Part shown: in pieces, positions 13,520 to 26,656 of the stretch | How positions within the stretch are numbered: position 1 is the stretch's first letter | Layout: each line of letters begins with the position of its first letter | DNA from: Paraphysomonas bandaiensis | Taxonomy: Eukaryota > Protista > Chrysophyceae | Assembly: GCA_965644295.1 (NCBI GenBank) | Contig: CBFFRP010000668.1 | Coordinates: 1-64,000, forward strand | Reading direction: 5' to 3' | Length of the DNA: 64,000 nucleotides | The notes under the pieces: generated by a model | What the model saw: the letters and a program-made list of their open reading frames with translations, nothing else | Database searches by the model: none | Told to the model about the DNA's origin: nothing | Translations under genes and position numbers: made by a program

Positions 13520-14595
13520 ATGAATATCCCTGGTGCAGATAGTATTGTGGAGGAGTATCTCATTCACAGAGGATTCACAAAGACCTTCCGTCACCTCCAG
13601 AATGAGAAAAGAGAAGATCGAACAAAGGGCTTCAGCGCCACTAGAATCGTTGAACAAATATTTTATTACATACACAATTTTGAGATGGAAAATTTTATAA
13701 ATTTATGGGATTTTCTTTCGAAGCGATTTTTCATGCATTTGGATCAAGAACACATTCTTTTGTTGAGCAAAGTAAAATCAGATTTGATTAAGTTTTATTT
13801 AGTAAATGCTATTAAGAAAAATCAAAAAGATAAAGTGACTGATTTCTTCACGAAGTATTCCCACGAGATTATAACGGAATCGGGAGATAGCTGTACTGGT
13901 TTACGCAGCTGGTATGTGCTGCCATATATGGAGGAACCTGAGAAAGACCCCGAGTTCATGGTATACTTCACTGTAAGGTGGTCAGAAATGCTTAGGGTTA
14001 CTTTGAATAATTTCCTATCGATGATACTACTTAATTCTCCTCCACCAAAGGTTGCATGGTTAATTACATTCTGTGTAGTTATTGTGATATTTTCGTGTAG
14101 TTACTTCTTTTGGAGCGCTGGTTTCGATCCGAAGCTCAGCAGGAAATGCGTATGCAATTGAAGCAAGCTTCTGAGAATGTGGAAAGTCTTTTGGCTAGAT
14201 TAAAATCCTACGAAGACCGCCTTATTACTCTGCATGGGGCTGTGAAAGACCTCGCGATGCAGTTGCACCATCACCACTCGCACATCACGGTCACTGATGC
14301 TACTGAGGCTGTGCGGAGAAGACGAACACCTAGTGTGGGTTTGTTTGAGACAGATGAGGATGCTGACAAAAAGCGGGAAGAAGTACGGAATCTTGGACAG
14401 GCTGTATGTCGCCTGGCTGCGGAATGTGTACAGAAGCGTGGGACACCTGCCCAGTCTGTAGGGGTGACAACCGGGAACAGAAGTGGCAGCAGAGTGTCGG
14501 ACGGTAAAAGATCTGTAGCAGAAATGAATACGGAAGAGATGGAGATACAGTTAATGCTGCAGCTGCAAGAATGGCTCAAAGCACTCAGTGTGTAA
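13520..14595 (+). CDS. WDR91 N-terminal (LisH/CTLH-like) domain protein without WD40 repeats; 2 exons
   Basis: DSIVEEYLIHRGFTKT, KFYLVNAI, WYVLPYMEEPEKDPEFMVYF recall the WDR91 N-terminus; intron 14051-14100 joins the two ORFs. Confidence 0.75.
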
Positions 14596-14980
14596 AAATA
14601 TTATGCGTGGTAGTGTAAAAAAAAAGATATGGTCTTATTTAGCTGTAGTGTTTTGGAACGGGTGCTGCGTTATATATTGTAGAAAATAGATATAACTGAT
14701 AGAATTTAGGAGTTATAATGTTGGTAGTTTGAATTGCTATACATCATCCTGTAAAAAGCAAGAGATACTAAACTCAATTACCTCTGACCTATGATACACT
14801 CTTGAGGGAAGATCATCACCTGTCACCTGTTGGGCTTAGGTTCATTTCAGAGGTCCAAGTACTGCAAACCAGGTCAGAGGATACTCCACAGTCAGAAATG
14901 GGTTTTAAGAGTCATCACATACATTTTTTCGTCTAGTTTTTCTCCAAACAGCAAAATATCGTGAAAAGAGTAATCTGTAG

Positions 14981-20174: not shown

Positions 20175-20360
20175 AGTAGTGAATGTCTGCACTAGTGCAG
20201 CAAAACAATGAAATTAGCTAGTGCTTCACTCTGATATCCTACTATTTAGCGCTACGAAAGCTGCTTGTGCATCACCGCCAAGGTGCAACCACTTTCGCAC
20301 TATCATTCAAAACAAACGCAGTGAGCAAACAAAATTTTGATATATCTGCTGACTTCAGGA
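20175..20360 (-). mobile_element. Family X, 5'-truncated copy
   Basis: CTCTGATATCCTACTATTTAGCGCTACGAAAGCTGCTTGTGC core. Confidence 0.8.
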
Positions 20361-21750
20361 TTGTTGATGCTTTGAGGGTGTATTCTCAAATTAGCAGTTC
20401 ATTTTTCACCAATAACTTATCATACTTTCAGCATTCTTTTTGCGAAGTGTATAAACGTTTGGCATTTTGGATAGATAAACTGAAATATCTGAACGTTGAA
20501 TTCACTTAGTTCTCAATTAGTAACATTAAAATCAACAGCTCTCATCATTCATTATTGTTATTCGCTACATTTATATCTGGTGAGTTCTGCTGCTGTTTCT
20601 TGGGCACAGAGAATATTTTAGGGCCGCATAAGTTGTATTTTGTAATAAAAAGATTATTATATCTATCTGAACAAGTAGCGATTCCAACATTCTAGTATTT
20701 AGCCTATCAGGTATCAACCAGAATTCCTTCATAATGGAGAGCATTGTTTGAAGCTTGTGCTTGGTACCGTGGTGTAATGTACAATAACCATCGTTGGGAG
20801 TAAATACGAGAGCATCGGTATGCGCATATTGTGGTGTGTGAAAAAATAAGTAGAAAAGTCTTTATGCCAGTTCGTGACTGACTAGCTGGGGATAGCCTGC
20901 TGTAGGGATTAGAGTCAGACTGCAGGCTTACTCAATCTCGAATGAGGAACACAGTGTGTGTTACCACCTACGCGCTCTGATAAGGCGCGGTTGAAGTCTA
21001 CTAGATTAACGTACAACCCCTAGTAGGGTGGATTCTTTTGTAAAAGTGTTGATAAGAGACTTGACTGAGACTGCGCCGTTGTAGAAGTAGAGTCTTGTTG
21101 GTAAGGGCATTGAGAAGGAGAGTGTAGGGGTGGCTCCATAAGGGTGGTTCAGTGCGTATGGGGGATAAGTGCTTGTATCACTTGGTGGGGGAGGTTAGGG
21201 AATATGATCAGAATGAAAGTGATATCTAACAGTAATCGAATAGTTCCTTCTCACCACAAGAGGTGTGCGGCTCATGAGAGGGACACAACCAGTGGTTGCC
21301 TCGAGGACAACATAAGTGTCACTATAGTGAGAACAATGACTTCCACAAAGATACAGCACCTTCATCCTGCGCGGGATGGCACTTGGAATTACTACGCACG
21401 TTGGATGCATGCATGGGATACATGGACGTACATGTCCACTGCTGTGTGTGAAAACTGAGAGCCAGCCATGAACTGTATACCAGGTCTAGAGTGTCTGTAT
21501 ACCGCCGTATATGCTGGTTAGGCGTTTCACTTCGCTCATTCTTTGGACGTTTTATCGTTTCATTTTTTAGTGGAACATACACAGAGTCACACTGCCATGT
21601 CCGGATATGTGGACGAATAGTTTGCTTGCGTCCCGTTGTTCTCTCCATAGACAGACAGGACCACAATGCACAATGCAGACGGAGTTTCGTATCAATGTGA
21701 AGTGTGATTTTCGCGCAATACATAAAGCTTGATTTACACTTAGTAGCATT

Positions 21751-22862
21751 ATGGGTGCATCTGCTTCAGTTGATGGAATATCAATGGAGGAGTTCTCCCG
21801 ATTAAAGCGTGAATATGAGGTAGGCGTGGAAATTGACAAGGATGTTGGTATTTACATGTTGTTACACAGCTCAAAGCTGCAGAGGGGGTGAGCAATGAAG
21901 CTATTTATGATCACATGCAAAGTGTAATTCAAACCATTGGTACTTCAAAGCCGGTAGTCTCAATGGAGTTGCTCTCCCAGCAGCATGAGTGCAACAACTG
22001 TTCTCAAGAAATAGTGAACAGGGCTACGTTTGATTATTTAAGTGATTCTAATCACAAGTTGTGTGAAACTAAAGTTAAAATTGTAAACGCCTTGAAGAGC
22101 GTACTCCTCTCGAAAGGGATTGATGTGACGACTGATGTGTCTGTACCCTGTCCTATCGTTACTCCCCATCAGAACTTCGATAGCATTCTTGTACCCAGTG
22201 ACCACTATTCAAGACGACCAACTGATGTATATTATGCGTGTGATGCAGCCATGCTGCGGACACATTTGGCTGCGCACCTCGCAGACACAGTCAAGTCAGG
22301 TGTTCTGTGCTACTGTATGAGTGGTCCTGTATTCAGACGTCTCGAAGAGGATACTACCCTCTCTGAATTATCTCATCACGTAAGTACTTGCTAACTGTTA
22401 ATATAATTTTTCATTGTAATCATAGCTGGAGTTTGTTCGAATTTATGATGGCGAAGATGTGGAGAACGAGTTTGTCTCTATCGCTGAGGAAGTGGTGAAG
22501 GCCTCTCTGCAAGAGCCGAAGCTGCGGTGGGAAGAAGCTGACGAATTTCCTTACGTAAAGAACTCACTTATGTCGTTGGAGACATTGTATCGAGATAGTC
22601 CGCTTGAAGTTGCACAGGGTGGAGTCTTATCAGAAGAGGTGAGCGTATGAGTTGACGTGGTGATGTGTTGTGACATGGTTGTCAGATGTTGAAGGAGCTA
22701 GAGCAAGGCGGCAAATCGGGGTATATTATTAATTTTGATCTGGATCATTTAGCGATGATTATTCATTCTATTGAAAGCATAAAGTAAGTACAATGTTCCT
22801 TGTTGTTTTGAAGGTAATATATTTTCAGAGATTTGCAAGATGCTGGGAATTGTGCGCAATGA
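21751..22862 (+). CDS. Degenerate mitochondrial-type phenylalanyl-tRNA synthetase catalytic-domain paralogue with N-myristoylation motif (~307 aa, 5 exons)
   Basis: Exons 21751-21819, 21870-22379, 22426-22638, 22686-22783, 22829-22862 splice in frame; PIVTPHQNFDSILVPSDHYSRRPTDVYY..MLRTH and GPVFRR match the FARS2 type; starts MGASAS. Confidence 0.8.
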
Positions 22863-23252
22863 GAAGTCAACTTTTTTGCATCTGAATTAATGACTCGCAG
22901 TGTTAATAATTTATCGTCGTTAATGAATAGTATTGAATGGCAATATCAAGTCTAATCTGCTGCATTTGCTAGCTACAGAAAGTCGGAACGTTATTATTTC
23001 ATCTGTTAAAATAATTCACTCTTGTGCAATTGTAACATGAGCCATAATTGTTAGTGCCATCAAGCTGTATAAGCACATGCTTTTTGTGTACGCTCCTGTT
23101 GTAGTTGTGGTTGCATCTCGGATCAAGGAGACCGTCCTTGCACTACTTGAGCTCCTCAATCTCGTTCGAGTCTGGGGTTTACTCTGTCAAGATATGACAC
23201 AATTGGATGATTTACTAAGTTAACTGGAGGTTTATTTACTCATTAATCAAGT

Positions 23253-24012
23253 TAAGATAAGAGAAGATTATAAAAAATATAATAAGCGATATATCACGTT
23301 ATCTCTACTACCACTCATTTCTAGTACGATCTTACATCGTCATGATATCACTTCTCATAATACAGCTCATCACTACTGTATTCTTCGACTAACGGTCATA
23401 ATTCCAACACCTTAGTAAGAAAAGAGAAGATTATAAAAAATATAATAAGCGATATATCACGTTATCTCTACTACCACTCATTTCTAGTACGACCTTACGT
23501 GGAACCACTTTCGCACTATCACTCAAAGCAAACGCAGTGAGCAAGCAGAAATCTATCCGTTATATATCCCCAGAACATCACAAAAAGGTGCGAGTCCGAC
23601 TTTGTTGAGGAGTAATTCGACATCCAAAATACAAGGGGGGGGGGAAGGGTTATAAAAAGGGCTTGCCTCTTCCCCCCCCCCTTGTTTTTTCATCCAGGAG
23701 CCGGTAAAGTGTAAGGTGACTGCGACATCGTGAGAAATAACGATGTCTGCCTGAGTGGAAGTGGAATATGTTGAGTTTTGCTGTTTGAGCAATTAAAAGC
23801 TGTAATTCTAAGGTGTTGGAATTATGACCGTTAGTCGAAGAATACAGTAGTGATGAGCTGTATTATGAGAAGTGATATCATGACGATGTGCAAGCAGCTT
23901 TCGTAGCGCTACATAGTAGGATGTAGGATGTAGGATATCAGAGTGAAGCACTAGCTAGTAAAGTTATAATGCTAAATTAGCTCCGACTCTTACACGCCTA
24001 TTGCTAATAATC
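23253..24012. repeat. Rearranged TE debris: LTR-like remnant with 83-bp direct and 82-bp inverted duplications plus split family X pieces
   Basis: 23253-23335 = 23416-23498; 23334-23415 = reverse complement of 23808-23889; X pieces at 23500-23612 (-) and 23889-24012 (+). Confidence 0.85.
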
Positions 24013-24557
24013 AGAAATTCTTTATATTAATCTTCAAAGTACTTTGTTTTATGAAAACCTAGCCGTTAATTGTTAATTGGTAACAGGTATCAGGCCATCC
24101 CACCGCTTGTATGGTTATTTAGTATTCAGTTTCCCACCAGTTTGGTGGCCAGTAATTTTAACATTCTCACCACTTTAATGCCACTTTATATATATGACAA
24201 TACTGTTGTTAAAATGAGTCTCACCATAAATGTATTGCAATTCAACATATTGTTCCCTAGCCCTGCTTTATATGTAGGCAGTGAATTGTGTGTCAGCGTA
24301 GTTACTAATTCTTCAGCAAAGTGACATATCAGTAATTGTGTCTGCACAACGAAAAACATACGTATGGGCGTTACACATCGTCCTTACAATATTTCATGAA
24401 CACTGTTTAAGGCCGGGTGACGTACGTTTCATGTGAAATGCTTGAAGGATATTGCACATATTTATATACCACAGTTGTAAACATAGCTATATGATTACTT
24501 TATGTTGTTCATGCAAAAACTTTACCAAGTGTATGGCCTAGACTTTCGCCAACTAAT

Positions 24558-25008
24558 TTAACTACCAGTTACGTCACCGATGTAATATGTCGCCAAGACA
24601 TCGTCCGCACTAATGGGGTGTTGTGGGCCTCGAAATCCTTCTGTCGAATCACCACCAACATTATTGAGAATAGTATCACCGCCAGGATGAATGTCGACAT
24701 ATGTCGTTACATCATAGACCTGACTTTCAAGGGTTAGATATGACATAACACATGCATCTGGAACCAACCTTTCCTTCGACAATGATCCATGCATCCGTGG
24801 GAGAATTGTGTCTTGCAACCTCATCTAGAGTAAGATTTCCACGGAACACAACTGGACTTCCTTGTACAACTTCTTGTTCGGAGGCAGGCTGTTTGTCTGC
24901 TGTGGGTGTGGATGGCGTTGTTGGCTGCTTCTGAAAAAACACATAAAAAAGTGCTGTGAATACAACAAGAATTATAGCAACGACAACTGAATTCGACGCC
25001 TGTTCCAT
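24558..25008 (-). CDS. Cytochrome b5 with N-terminal membrane anchor; 2 exons
   Basis: EVARHNSPTDAWIIVEGK|VYDVTTYVDIHPGG...FRGPQH; intron 24768-24720. Confidence 0.93.
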
Positions 25009-25479
25009 TCCTAGACACGACCTACAGCTCTAAATTCTCGATGAGTTAGTTGCAAGGAGAGGAGAGTCCATGTGCACTGCTGCGTGATGGTGGAAATACA
25101 TCCACAATACAAGTACTACAACACCCATCGTCACCAGCACAGGAGTAGGTATGAGTGTGTACGTACCAAGTCTAGAAGTACCTACAGCTAGCAGAGTACA
25201 GTACATTATACAGCAGAATACATACTAGACCTGTAGAGTTGTACCGTTTGTACAGTGCTGGAAGAGAGTTGTTCGCAGTGAGAGCTGAGCTGAGTGCGGT
25301 GGGGATCTGGATCGAAGACTTGAAGAGGAGTGAACTGCATTGAAACGCACACTATCGTACTTGTTTAAACAGTATAGTGGGGTGTGATGTGCTGTATGAC
25401 AGTGTGGTAGGCGTTATATATCAGTAATGCTGGTGGACTCTAGTGTTCAATGAGTGCCGTCAGCTAAGCAGTAGTTCCG

Positions 25480-26656
25480 ATGGGTGTATTGTTCTCTAGT
25501 GGAGCGTATAGAGATATCTATTCAACTCATGGGGTGATAGCAACACAGAAGGAATCATTTGAAAACATCGGTATCCGTTCATTGAAACTGTTCTACTTGT
25601 TACTGTTTATCGTAGGCCTCAGCGAGAAGAATGTTGGTGAACTGTATAAAATGTTTTCCAATAATCGAATAGATTCGTCTGGTGCGATACGCATCCGCGA
25701 GCTAGTTTATCATATGCATATAACTGGGGAACGCTTTATGACTCGAGTTTGTCAAGTGTTCTCGCGAGATAAAACGCATTTGGATTTCTTGGAATTCGTG
25801 TATGCAGTATGGAATTTTTGTACTCTTCGAAACAAGCAGAAATCGTACGGTAAGCGTAGTGGGTGGTGTGGCCAGTTATCTTATTACATGCAGATCAATT
25901 TGTGTTTGAACTGTATGAAGATAGCTGCTGTGGTGTCCTTACTGTTTCCCAAGCCCAGATGGCTATTTCAGACATTTACGGTGATGATCTCCCGAGAAAT
26001 ATCATCGCTGCTAAGTACGCCTTGTGTGCACTTGTGCGGAAATGTAAACTTATATCTCTGTGATTTCAGGGCGCACAAAGCTCTTGGTCGTGGGGAGGGA
26101 CGTCCGATGACATTTCAAGATTTCCAGCGATTTGTGGATGAGCATGTCGGTGTGCTATTTCAGGTTCGCAACTACCAGCATAAACTACGCACGCGTGTGT
26201 TGGGTGAGCGACAATGGGAGACCTTATCCAATGTGCGTGTCAAAATAAACGGTGGGAAGCAATGTGTGCACATCGAACAGTGGCATACAGTTTCAAACTC
26301 AGTACGTTGCTTCAGTGACTGCACCGACGGGACTGCATCTTCGAGGAGAGACAGTACGGGAAGCATACATCGAAGCACTTCGACTAACAGGTAAATGTTT
26401 TGAAAATCCTCTACAGATGGGGTATTGTGGTGAGTTAGTTTAGAATCTCACTGCAGCGCAGTCAGGATACGAGGAAGAAGCCTGGCCGTGGCCCCCGCCA
26501 GTTACACAAAGCGAAGTCAATGTATGTCTGAGTGGTTTGTCCGCAATGGTAACTTTTTTCAGGTCCAGTGTCTACGCTGACTCGAATGAGGAAGTTAACA
26601 TTTCCCATCAGCTATTAGTCAAAGGAAGAAGACATTCCTTGAGTCGCACGGGTTGA
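25480..26656 (+). CDS. Degenerate EF-hand (calcineurin-B-like) protein with N-myristoylation motif; ~6 exons
   Basis: MGVLFS; IDSSGAIRIRE, LDFLEFVYAVWNFC, FVFELYEDSCCGVLT, MTFQDFQRF; short GT-AG introns restore frame. Confidence 0.7.

What the first reader, a model, noticed from the sequence alone, without database searches (positions are those of the whole stretch)
21751..22862. Myristoylated, apparently catalytically altered PheRS paralogue lacking the anticodon-binding domain
Seen: an intact 5-exon ORF with a FARS2-type core. Motif 2 reads FRRLEEDTTLSELSHHLE versus the usual YRRDEIDxxHYPVFHQME. Motif 3 reads GYIINFDLDHLAM versus GWAFGLGLERLAM, losing the Gly-rich loop and the ATP-binding Arg. 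The protein ends before the C-terminal FDX-ACB domain. Instead of a mitochondrial presequence it starts MGASAS (MGxxxS) plus an acidic helical module. Inference: a membrane-tethered pseudo-synthetase repurposed as a sensor, scaffold or non-canonical ligase, by analogy with GCN2, HisZ and EpmA.
Basis: partly seen in the sequence, partly recalled or inferred. Interest (0 to 1): 0.7.

Follow-up and report, generated by a model that had tools for sequence, protein, structure and literature searches.

The report
Lipid-tagged, inactive-looking PheRS copy
A colourless marine flagellate (Paraphysomonas) expresses a shortened copy of its mitochondrial phenylalanine-tRNA ligase that has lost key ATP- and tRNA-binding parts, carries a conserved lipid-anchor signal instead of a mitochondrial address, and belongs to an undescribed, conserved protein family of unknown job.

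Summary
Spliced contigs from four RNA-type runs (three organism labels and one polyA marine metatranscriptome) confirm all four GT..AG introns and show no further downstream exon. The 307-aa product is on record as an MMETSP Paraphysomonas protein.

It folds as a complete FARS2-type class II catalytic core (AF2 pLDDT 91; best PDB match is human mtPheRS, TM 0.72). It has no FDX-ACB domain and no presequence.

A canonical FARS2, with presequence, normal motifs 2 and 3 and FDX-ACB, lies elsewhere in the genome. It shares two intron positions with this gene, so the paralogue arose by gene duplication.

At least 13 clusters of relatives (50% identity or less) form one branch apart from canonical FARS2. 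All seven genomic loci and one environmental full-length protein (eight members) show:
- a start of MGxxxS;
- motif-3 Arg replaced by His;
- two glycines of the Phe-AMP strand replaced;
- a family-specific acidic signature.

dN/dS between two orthologues is about 0.1. The proteins are very acidic (pI about 4.8).

My verdict is a real, selected, probably N-myristoylated pseudo-synthetase, or a ligand binder with a new specificity. It is not a PheRS. The function is unknown and I found no literature on it.

The parts
21633..21750 (+). Transcribed 5' leader. It holds an in-frame TGA at 21730-21732 and upstream AUGs at 21666, 21673 and 21695.
   Evidence: The longest spliced contig starts at 21633. 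The sequence was read.
21751..21819 (+). Exon 1 (23 codons). Begins MGASASV, which fits the N-myristoylation consensus (Gly2, Ser6), and ends ..EYE.
   Evidence: The MGxxxS start is conserved in 8 of 8 orthologues.
21820..21869 (+). Intron 1 (50 nt, GT..AG).
   Evidence: Seen as a joint in 4 runs.
21870..22379 (+). Exon 2 (170 codons). Encodes the helical N-module and the first half of the class II core, through the altered motif 2 (residues 175-193 at 22323-22379).
22380..22425 (+). Intron 2 (46 nt, phase 0). It sits at the same position as the intron after motif 2 (..FHQ|) in the genome's canonical FARS2.
22426..22638 (+). Exon 3 (71 codons). Encodes the shortened insertion, the conserved LRWEE.DE segment and the FPY counterpart of the Phe-binding FPF.
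22639..22685 (+). Intron 3 (47 nt, phase 0). Its position is shared with the canonical FARS2 intron (..HDQ|). It is retained in one MMETSP isoform, which gives the truncated 267-aa product P0001.
22686..22783 (+). Exon 4. Carries the altered motif 3 (G276-M288 at 22719-22757), with His285 in place of the invariant Arg and Asn280/Asp282 in place of glycines.
22784..22828 (+). Intron 4 (45 nt, GT..AG, phase 2).
22829..22862 (+). Exon 5: a short, variable C-terminal tail and the TGA stop. There is no FDX-ACB domain.
22863..22927 (+). 3' UTR, to the end of the transcript contigs.
   Evidence: Contig ends were inferred from the piece lengths.

Best explanation
This is a functional, expressed gene of the heterotrophic chrysophyte Paraphysomonas. 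It arose by DNA-level duplication of the nuclear gene for the monomeric mitochondrial PheRS (FARS2). The copy kept the whole class II catalytic fold. It lost the FDX-ACB anticodon-binding domain and the mitochondrial presequence, gained an N-terminal Met-Gly-x-x-x-Ser myristoylation signal plus a two-helix module, and rebuilt the active-site cleft. In the cleft, the motif-3 Arg that binds ATP phosphates is now His. Two glycines of the strand that lies against Phe-AMP now carry side chains (Asn/Thr/Cys and Asp). The conserved motif-2 Phe (Phe155 in human numbering), which I recall as the adenine-stacking residue, is Ser/Cys/Gln. Several new invariant acidic residues line the cleft. The protein is strongly acidic overall.

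It therefore most likely cannot make Phe-AMP or charge tRNA-Phe. I propose that it works outside the mitochondrion as a myristoylated, reversibly membrane-associated pseudo-synthetase that uses the remodelled pocket to bind a different, probably cationic or amino-group-bearing, ligand or a partner protein.

Shown here: gene structure, expression, fold, residue changes, family conservation and purifying selection. Inferred: loss of aminoacylation, actual myristoylation, location and ligand.
For: Expression and splicing:
- Four runs show all four joints with 0 mismatches, and the transcript ends about 65 nt past the stop.
- The product is identical to database protein P0152 from MMETSP1103, taxid 36769, Paraphysomonas.

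Fold:
- AF2 gives pLDDT 91.4 and pTM 0.83.
- The best PDB match is human mtPheRS 3cmq at E 7e-23 and TM 0.72. ESM Atlas structural neighbours are eukaryotic FARS2.

Paralogy:
- A canonical FARS2 lies at C374:75992-77509 with a presequence, normal motifs 2 and 3 and FDX-ACB.
- It shares two phase-0 intron positions with this gene.

Family:
- There are 13 clusters at E 1e-18 or better.
- They form one side of a branch against 42 canonical FARS2 rows, SH-aLRT 99.

Conservation of the altered state:
- Arg to His at motif 3 in 8 of 8 members.
- G277 to N/T/C and G279 to D in all members.
- F155 to S/C/Q in most members.
- D145 to a hydrophobic residue in all members.
- Family-invariant residues include Y136, E182/E183, S188/E189, E229/E230 and D282/D284/H285.

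Relevance of these sites in human mtPheRS (PMC5521548):
- The glycine-lined strand 270-279 contacts Phe-AMP.
- The Gly273Ser mutant has almost no charging activity.

Other evidence:
- Selection: dN/dS is 0.07-0.14 between L017 and L019.
- The MGxxxS start occurs in 8 of 8 members, and an NMT gene is present.
- pI is 4.7-5.1, against 5.8-8.8 for canonical FARS2.
- No FDX-ACB match occurs outside C374.
Against: - No biochemical data exist.
- The motif-2 Arg is kept in 12 of 14 members.
- Part of the network that holds the amino-acid alpha-amino group is often retained. This is His119, Gln157 and Glu159 in human numbering; the Ser/Thr position is Thr in most orthologues but Ala in this window's protein.
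- Some catalytic or ligand-activating role therefore cannot be excluded.
- Myristoylation is predicted from a consensus only, and no second membrane signal is present.
- I could not inspect model coordinates, so the description of the pocket rests on alignment to human mtPheRS.
- The taxonomic range of the family is unknown, because all relatives but one come from unnamed metagenomic or metatranscriptomic contigs.
Confidence: 0.7

Rival explanations
1. It is still an enzyme: a ligase or transferase with new chemistry on the class II fold. For example, it might activate or transfer a non-Phe amino acid or amine onto a non-tRNA acceptor, by analogy with EpmA, AsnA or the amino-acid:carrier-protein ligases. 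The new Asp/His/Glu residues would be catalytic or metal-binding.
For: The cleft is not decaying. It carries its own invariant signature (E182/E183, S188/E189, E229/E230, D282/D284/H285). The motif-2 Arg is mostly kept, as are His, Gln and Glu of the amino-group site; the Ser/Thr position is Thr in most orthologues but Ala here. The protein is under strong purifying selection. The best NCBIfam profile over the full length is the bacterial 'PheS-related mystery ligase SrmL', at 78.6 bits.
Against: The motif-3 Arg is absent in all members and the motif-2 Arg is His in two lineages. The conserved motif-2 Phe (Phe155) is lost, and two glycines that make room for the adenylate are filled (PMC5521548). 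The SrmL score is far below its cut-off of 300. No acceptor or partner is known.
Confidence: 0.2
2. It is a relic of a former plastid-directed organellar PheRS. It would have become free to change when the Paraphysomonas lineage lost its plastid genome and plastid translation, rather than being a duplicate of the mitochondrial enzyme as such.
For: Paraphysomonas has a genome-lacking plastid (Dorrell et al. 2019, as cited in 10.1101/2024.02.03.578753). The genome has no LHC or PsbO genes. The family sits on a long branch whose attachment within FARS2 is unresolved.
Against: The family is as diverse as FARS2 itself (end branches 0.6-1.6), which suggests an older origin than one genus. No trace of a signal or transit peptide remains. 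It shares introns with the mitochondrial copy. The tree is unrooted and contains no plastid-type sequences, so this idea is essentially untested.
Confidence: 0.07
3. It is a decaying duplicate (a transcribed pseudogene), or a gene-model artefact that is missing its C-terminal exons.
For: Catalytic motifs are altered and the C-terminal domain is absent. One MMETSP isoform retains intron 3 and is truncated.
Against: Seven genomic loci (the window and six metagenomic orthologue loci) and the environmental transcript-derived protein P0010 all keep an open frame. The loci share the same exon layout apart from L021, which lacks intron 2, and all eight end similarly. dN/dS is about 0.1. The family has invariant residues of its own. 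Transcript contigs end just after the stop codon. There is no FDX-ACB hit on this contig.
Confidence: 0.03

Closest known systems
Mitochondrial phenylalanine-tRNA ligase (FARS2; TIGR00469; PDB 3cmq)
   Same: It shares the monomeric FARS2-type class II core, including the FARS2-specific N-terminal segment. The best sequence match is E 3e-19 and the best structure match is TM 0.72. It shares two intron positions with the genome's own FARS2.
   Different: It has no FDX-ACB domain and no presequence. The motif-3 Arg is His, the glycine-lined Phe-AMP strand is filled, and Phe155 is lost. The insertion is shortened (about 18 versus about 54 residues). It has an acidic pI and an MGxxxS start. Its HMM score is 74 against a cut-off of 258.
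aaRS-derived pseudo-synthetases (SLIMP, HisZ, the GCN2 HisRS-like domain, POLG2)
   Same: An aaRS catalytic fold is retained after duplication, the catalytic residues are changed, and the copy is conserved under selection for a non-aminoacylation role. To my recollection, SLIMP is likewise a paralogue of a mitochondrial aaRS.
   Different: It derives from PheRS rather than SerRS, HisRS or ProRS/GlyRS. It is predicted to be N-myristoylated and extra-mitochondrial. Its partner and ligand are unknown. The comparison to these proteins rests on recalled literature and was not tested here.
PheS-related mystery ligase SrmL (NCBIfam NF051887, bacterial)
   Same: It is a stand-alone PheS-like core without tRNA-binding appendages, and it gives the top NCBIfam profile hit over residues 83-301 (78.6 bits).
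   Different: The score is far below the cut-off of 300. The nearest sequences beyond the family are eukaryotic FARS2 rather than bacterial proteins, and it shares spliceosomal intron positions with FARS2. I found no literature on SrmL.
EpmA/PoxA/GenX (LysRS-like EF-P lysyl ligase)
   Same: It is a truncated class II core lacking the anticodon-binding domain.
   Different: From memory, EpmA keeps its catalytic motifs and is an active ligase. Here the motif-3 Arg is lost in every member.

Membership tests
Pfam PF01409 tRNA-synt_2d (class II core, Phe type) | Profile match above the gathering score across the domain | tested here: met
   52.3 bits against a cut-off of 19.8; residues 95-300 match profile positions 23-236 of 246.
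Canonical mitochondrial PheRS (FARS2, TIGR00469) | Equivalog HMM score above the cut-off | tested here: not met
   74.3 bits against a cut-off of 258.35.
Canonical mitochondrial PheRS (FARS2, TIGR00469) | Invariant motif-3 Arg (Arg282 in human 3cmq numbering) | tested here: not met
   It is His285 here and His in all 8 family members with this region. Canonical sequences have Arg in 18 of 18 aligned rows.
Canonical mitochondrial PheRS (FARS2, TIGR00469) | Motif-2 Arg (Arg143 in human numbering) | tested here: met
   It is R179 here. Two orthologues (L022 and L023) have His instead.
Canonical mitochondrial PheRS (FARS2, TIGR00469) | Glycine-lined strand and aromatic residues that hold Phe-AMP (G273/G277/G279, F155, F232/F234) | tested here: not met
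   G277 is N/T/C, G279 is D and F155 is S/C/Q. The F232/F234 positions are not conserved across the family. The residue roles come from PMC5521548.
Canonical mitochondrial PheRS (FARS2, TIGR00469) | C-terminal FDX-ACB anticodon-binding domain | tested here: not met
   PF03147 is found only at C374. The transcript ends about 65 nt after the stop. All orthologues end at the same point.
Canonical mitochondrial PheRS (FARS2, TIGR00469) | N-terminal mitochondrial presequence | tested here: inconclusive
   No targeting predictor was available. The first 30 residues have net charge -2 with six acidic residues, whereas the canonical copy starts with a basic, acid-poor leader.
PheS-related ligase SrmL (NF051887) | Equivalog HMM score above the cut-off | tested here: not met
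   78.6 bits against a cut-off of 300.
N-myristoylated proteins | Met-Gly start with a small or uncharged residue at position 3, Ser/Thr at position 6 and no Pro at position 7 | tested here: met
   The start is MGASASV. The pattern holds in 8 of 8 orthologues, although the rest of exon 1 is only 39-48% identical between the window and L017/L019 (75% between L017 and L019).
N-myristoylated proteins | N-myristoyltransferase present in the organism | tested here: met
   PF01233 is found at C400:163790-164416, E 1e-28.
N-myristoylated proteins | Covalent myristate on Gly2 | not testable with these tools
   This needs metabolic labelling or mass spectrometry.
aaRS-derived pseudo-synthetases | aaRS fold retained with loss of aminoacylation activity | not testable with these tools
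   The fold and the residue loss are shown. Activity was not assayed.

The most novel reading that the evidence does not exclude
The family is a new class of aaRS-fold protein. It would be a myristoyl-switch, membrane-associated sensor or enzyme whose rebuilt, acidic Asp/His/Glu pocket binds a cationic metabolite or metal ion (an amino acid or a polyamine, for example). It would couple this signal to a membrane process in heterotrophic chrysophytes, as the first PheRS-derived signalling module.
Probability: 0.25. Interest if true: 0.75.

Novelty: new variant of a known kind. Interest (0 to 1): 0.55.

Why it matters
aaRS paralogues that have left translation (HisZ, GCN2, SLIMP, POLG2) are textbook cases of enzyme repurposing. 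I found no described case derived from the monomeric organellar PheRS, and none that carries a lipid-anchor signal.

This family is conserved, expressed in the ocean and currently auto-annotated as 'phenylalanyl-tRNA synthetase alpha subunit'. That annotation would mislead counts of organellar translation machinery in protists, including work on plastid-genome loss in Paraphysomonas. The family also offers a clean natural experiment on which parts of the class II cleft can be rebuilt while the fold is kept.

Tried and rejected
- **Exon-by-exon searches.** Exons 3 and 4 alone gave no Pfam or NCBIfam hit. Only the full product shows the second half of the core. Whole-protein work used database protein P0152, whose length and sequence correspond, by my reading, to the five exon translations.
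- **Word-index search.** The full protein found only two relatives. The exhaustive representative search was needed to see the family.
- **Metagenome scan.** A scan of metagenome contigs with the family alignment found nothing.
- **dN/dS.** Window against orthologues was not computable because dS is saturated. Only the L017/L019 pair was usable.
- **Phylogeny.** The careful (bootstrap) tree did not finish in two runs, so I report the quick tree with SH-aLRT support. It is unrooted, so the attachment point and age of the duplication are open.
- **Model coordinates.** These are not available to scripts, so there is no pocket geometry or electrostatics.
- **Literature.** Searches for a PheRS-like, FARS2-like or myristoylated aaRS paralogue and for SrmL found nothing relevant.
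- **Organism.** I reject that, because no LHC or PsbO gene is found in 62.5 Mb and the MMETSP label is Paraphysomonas.
- **Pseudogene and missing-exon readings.** Both are rejected (see the rival explanations).

Full report
**1. The observation**

The region reads as a five-exon gene on the + strand:
- exon 1, 21751-21819
- exon 2, 21870-22379
- exon 3, 22426-22638
- exon 4, 22686-22783
- exon 5, 22829-22862, ending in TGA

The introns are 50, 46, 47 and 45 nt, all GT..AG. A database protein, P0152 (307 aa), came back from a cluster look-up. Its length and sequence correspond, by my reading, to the five exon translations, and I used it for all whole-protein work.

Laying contigs of four runs on 20300-25800 showed all four joints in each run, with 0 mismatches. 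The runs were one polyA marine metatranscriptome and three runs under three different organism labels. One of those three (X5) is flagged as probably DNA, but its contig is spliced like the others. The spliced contigs run from 21633 to about 22927 and end about 65 nt after the stop.

An in-frame TGA at 21730-21732 inside the transcribed leader fixes the start at MGASAS.

**2. What it is homologous to**

- Exon 2 alone matches human mitochondrial PheRS (3cmq) at E 6e-13 and TIGR00469 at 5e-13.
- The whole product matches PF01409 over positions 23-236 of 246, at 52 bits.
- It aligns to 3cmq chain residues 24-294. The insertion between the two halves shrinks from about 54 to about 18 residues.
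- An AlphaFold2 model built on a 42-row alignment has pLDDT 91.4 and pTM 0.83.
- Foldseek puts human mtPheRS structures first (E 7e-23, TMq 0.72, rmsd 2.2-2.8 Å, 23% identity), ahead of bacterial PheS alpha chains.
- The ESM Atlas model's structural neighbours are eukaryotic FARS2.

The fold is therefore a complete FARS2-type catalytic module preceded by two helices (residues 12-46).

**3. The rest of the genome**

The assembly is 62.5 Mb in 669 contigs. It holds three PheRS-type loci: cytosolic FARSA on C80, this gene, and a canonical FARS2 at C374:75992-77509.

The C374 gene has a basic presequence-like leader, the usual YRRDEID..HYPVFHQ motif 2, the usual GWAFGLGLERLAM motif 3, and the only FDX-ACB match in the genome. 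No FDX-ACB exon lies near this gene.

Two of the paralogue's introns sit at the same alignment positions and the same phase 0 as introns of the C374 gene:
- one after the His-Gln/His-His that ends motif 2;
- one after ..GVIHDQ / ..GVLSEE.

This argues for a DNA-level duplication of the nuclear FARS2 gene, and against retroposition or bacterial transfer.

**4. Organism**

P0152 carries an MMETSP1103 header with taxon 36769, Paraphysomonas, a colourless chrysophyte. The genome has no LHC (PF00504) or PsbO (PF01716) gene. This fits a non-photosynthetic organism and contradicts an earlier scan note that called this genome a diatom.

Paraphysomonas is reported to keep a plastid without a genome (10.1101/2024.02.03.578753, citing Dorrell et al. 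2019). Mitochondria would then be its only translating organelle.

**5. A conserved family**

An exhaustive phmmer search of 1.84 billion representatives with exon 2 gave two groups of hits. A first group of 13 clusters scored E 1e-108 to 7e-18, and all carry the altered motif 2. Canonical FARS2 sequences followed, from about 1e-16 downward.

I recovered six orthologous genomic loci from metagenomes (L017, L019-L023) and one full-length environmental protein (P0010, 313 aa).

Five of the six loci show the same exon layout, and L021 lacks intron 2. All six have a short C-terminal tail and no FDX-ACB. The relatives are 34-56% identical to the window's protein.

In a quick ML tree (LG+C20, 55 rows) the 13 family rows form one side of a branch against 42 canonical rows, with SH-aLRT 99. 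The stem is long (0.46 + 0.89 changes per site). The careful search did not finish, and the tree is unrooted.

Members of all 13 clusters come from JGI, ENA, Logan or one unnamed NCBI record. Paraphysomonas is the only named source. JGI's automatic name for several of them is 'phenylalanyl-tRNA synthetase alpha subunit'.

**6. Selection**

Between the window and L017 or L019, synonymous sites are saturated. Between L017 and L019 (68-75% amino-acid identity), Nei-Gojobori estimates per exon are dN 0.12-0.21 and dS 0.9-2.9. This gives omega of 0.07-0.14.

**7. What changed in the cleft**

I mapped residues through the HMMER alignment to 3cmq and tabulated 14 family members against 27 canonical sequences.

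| Site (human mtPheRS numbering) | Canonical | Family |
|---|---|---|
| Motif-3 Arg282 | Arg | His in all 8 members with this region |
| Gly277 | Gly | Asn/Thr/Cys |
| Gly279 | Gly | Asp in all |
| Ala275, Phe276 | Ala, Phe | Ile/Leu/Val |
| Phe155 | Phe, 27 of 27 | Ser/Cys/Gln in most |
| Asp145 | Asp | hydrophobic in all |
| Tyr152-Pro153 | Tyr-Pro | Ser-Glu in all |
| Thr120 | Thr | Leu |
| Gln124 | Gln | Leu |
| Motif-2 Arg143 | Arg | kept in 12 of 14, His in two |
| Phe232/Phe234 (sandwich the phenyl ring) | Phe | aromatic here (F234, Y236), not conserved across the family |

In human mtPheRS, the glycine-lined strand 270-279 contacts Phe-AMP and the Gly273Ser mutant has almost no charging activity. 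Ser121, Thr120, Gln157 and Glu159 hold the amino group, and Phe232/Phe234 recognise the ring (PMC5521548).

That the motif-2 and motif-3 arginines bind the ATP phosphates in class II synthetases is established knowledge that I recall. I did not test it here.

The family also has invariant residues of its own: Y136, V143, E182/E183, S188/E189, E229/E230 and D282/D284/H285. This is remodelling rather than decay.

His119, Gln157 and Glu159 equivalents are often retained. The Ser/Thr position is Thr in most orthologues but Ala in this window's protein. Binding of an amino-group-bearing ligand therefore remains possible.

The proteins are very acidic: pI 4.7-5.1 and net charge -14 to -24, against pI 5.8-8.8 for canonical FARS2. 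That, together with the missing anticodon-binding domain, argues against tRNA binding.

**8. The N-terminus**

All eight orthologues with a known exon 1 start Met-Gly-x-x-x-Ser and end the exon ..EYE. Elsewhere the exon is only 39-48% identical between the window and L017 or L019. An N-myristoyltransferase gene is present at C400.

The first 30 residues have net charge -2, unlike the basic leader of the canonical copy. None of the eight has a nearby Cys or a polybasic stretch. From general knowledge of acylated proteins, myristate alone predicts weak or switchable membrane binding rather than a stable tether.

**9. Interpretation**

Most likely (about 0.7), this is a selected, expressed, probably N-myristoylated pseudo-synthetase derived from FARS2. 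It no longer makes Phe-AMP or charges tRNA-Phe, and it uses the rebuilt acidic pocket to bind another ligand or a partner outside the mitochondrion.

The rivals are:
- an enzyme with new chemistry (about 0.2);
- a relic of a plastid-directed PheRS (about 0.07, essentially untested);
- a pseudogene or gene-model artefact (about 0.03, refuted as far as sequence data allow).

**10. Comparison and novelty**

The protein is a member of Pfam PF01409. It fails the equivalog cut-offs of both TIGR00469 (74 against 258) and the bacterial SrmL family (79 against 300).

It works like the known aaRS-derived pseudo-synthetases (HisZ, the GCN2 HisRS-like domain, SLIMP, POLG2). That comparison rests on recalled literature.

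I class it as a new variant of a known kind, of moderate interest. The function remains unknown.

Noticed in passing
window 22639-22685: One MMETSP transcript (P0001, 267 aa) retains intron 3 and ends ..SEEVSV*. A truncated isoform, or unspliced RNA, therefore co-exists with the full 307-aa form.
   Followed up: partly
window 21633-21750: The longest transcript contigs carry upstream AUGs at 21666, 21673 (an in-frame 19-codon uORF ending at the TGA at 21730) and 21695 (AUG-stop). A shorter contig starts at 21714, beyond them. This could reflect alternative starts or uORF control.
   Followed up: no
window 23200-24020: This stretch has very high and uneven contig depth (up to about 37,000 in X5), many mismatches, loose ends and 'opposite strands' joints. 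It is a multi-copy repeat with inverted structure just downstream of the gene.
   Followed up: no
window 24509-25040 (-): An expressed two-exon gene on the minus strand. Its 49-nt intron reads CT..AC on the + strand. It encodes a small membrane-anchored cytochrome-b5-like protein.
   Followed up: no
window 13520-14600 (+): An ORF whose N-terminus resembles, from memory, the LisH/CTLH-like WDR91 (SORF-1) family.
   Followed up: no
window 25480-26394 (+): The next gene downstream also begins MGVLFSS, another MGxxxS start. It may be a second candidate N-myristoylated protein.
   Followed up: no
G000 whole genome: No LHC (PF00504) or PsbO (PF01716) gene is found in 62.5 Mb, and the MMETSP label is Paraphysomonas. 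An earlier scan note (s1-445143) that calls this genome a diatom is probably wrong about the organism.
   Followed up: partly
G000:C374:75992-77509 (-): The canonical FARS2 gene. It has at least 6 exons, a presequence-like leader, normal motifs 2 and 3, and FDX-ACB. It is the true organellar PheRS of this genome.
   Followed up: yes
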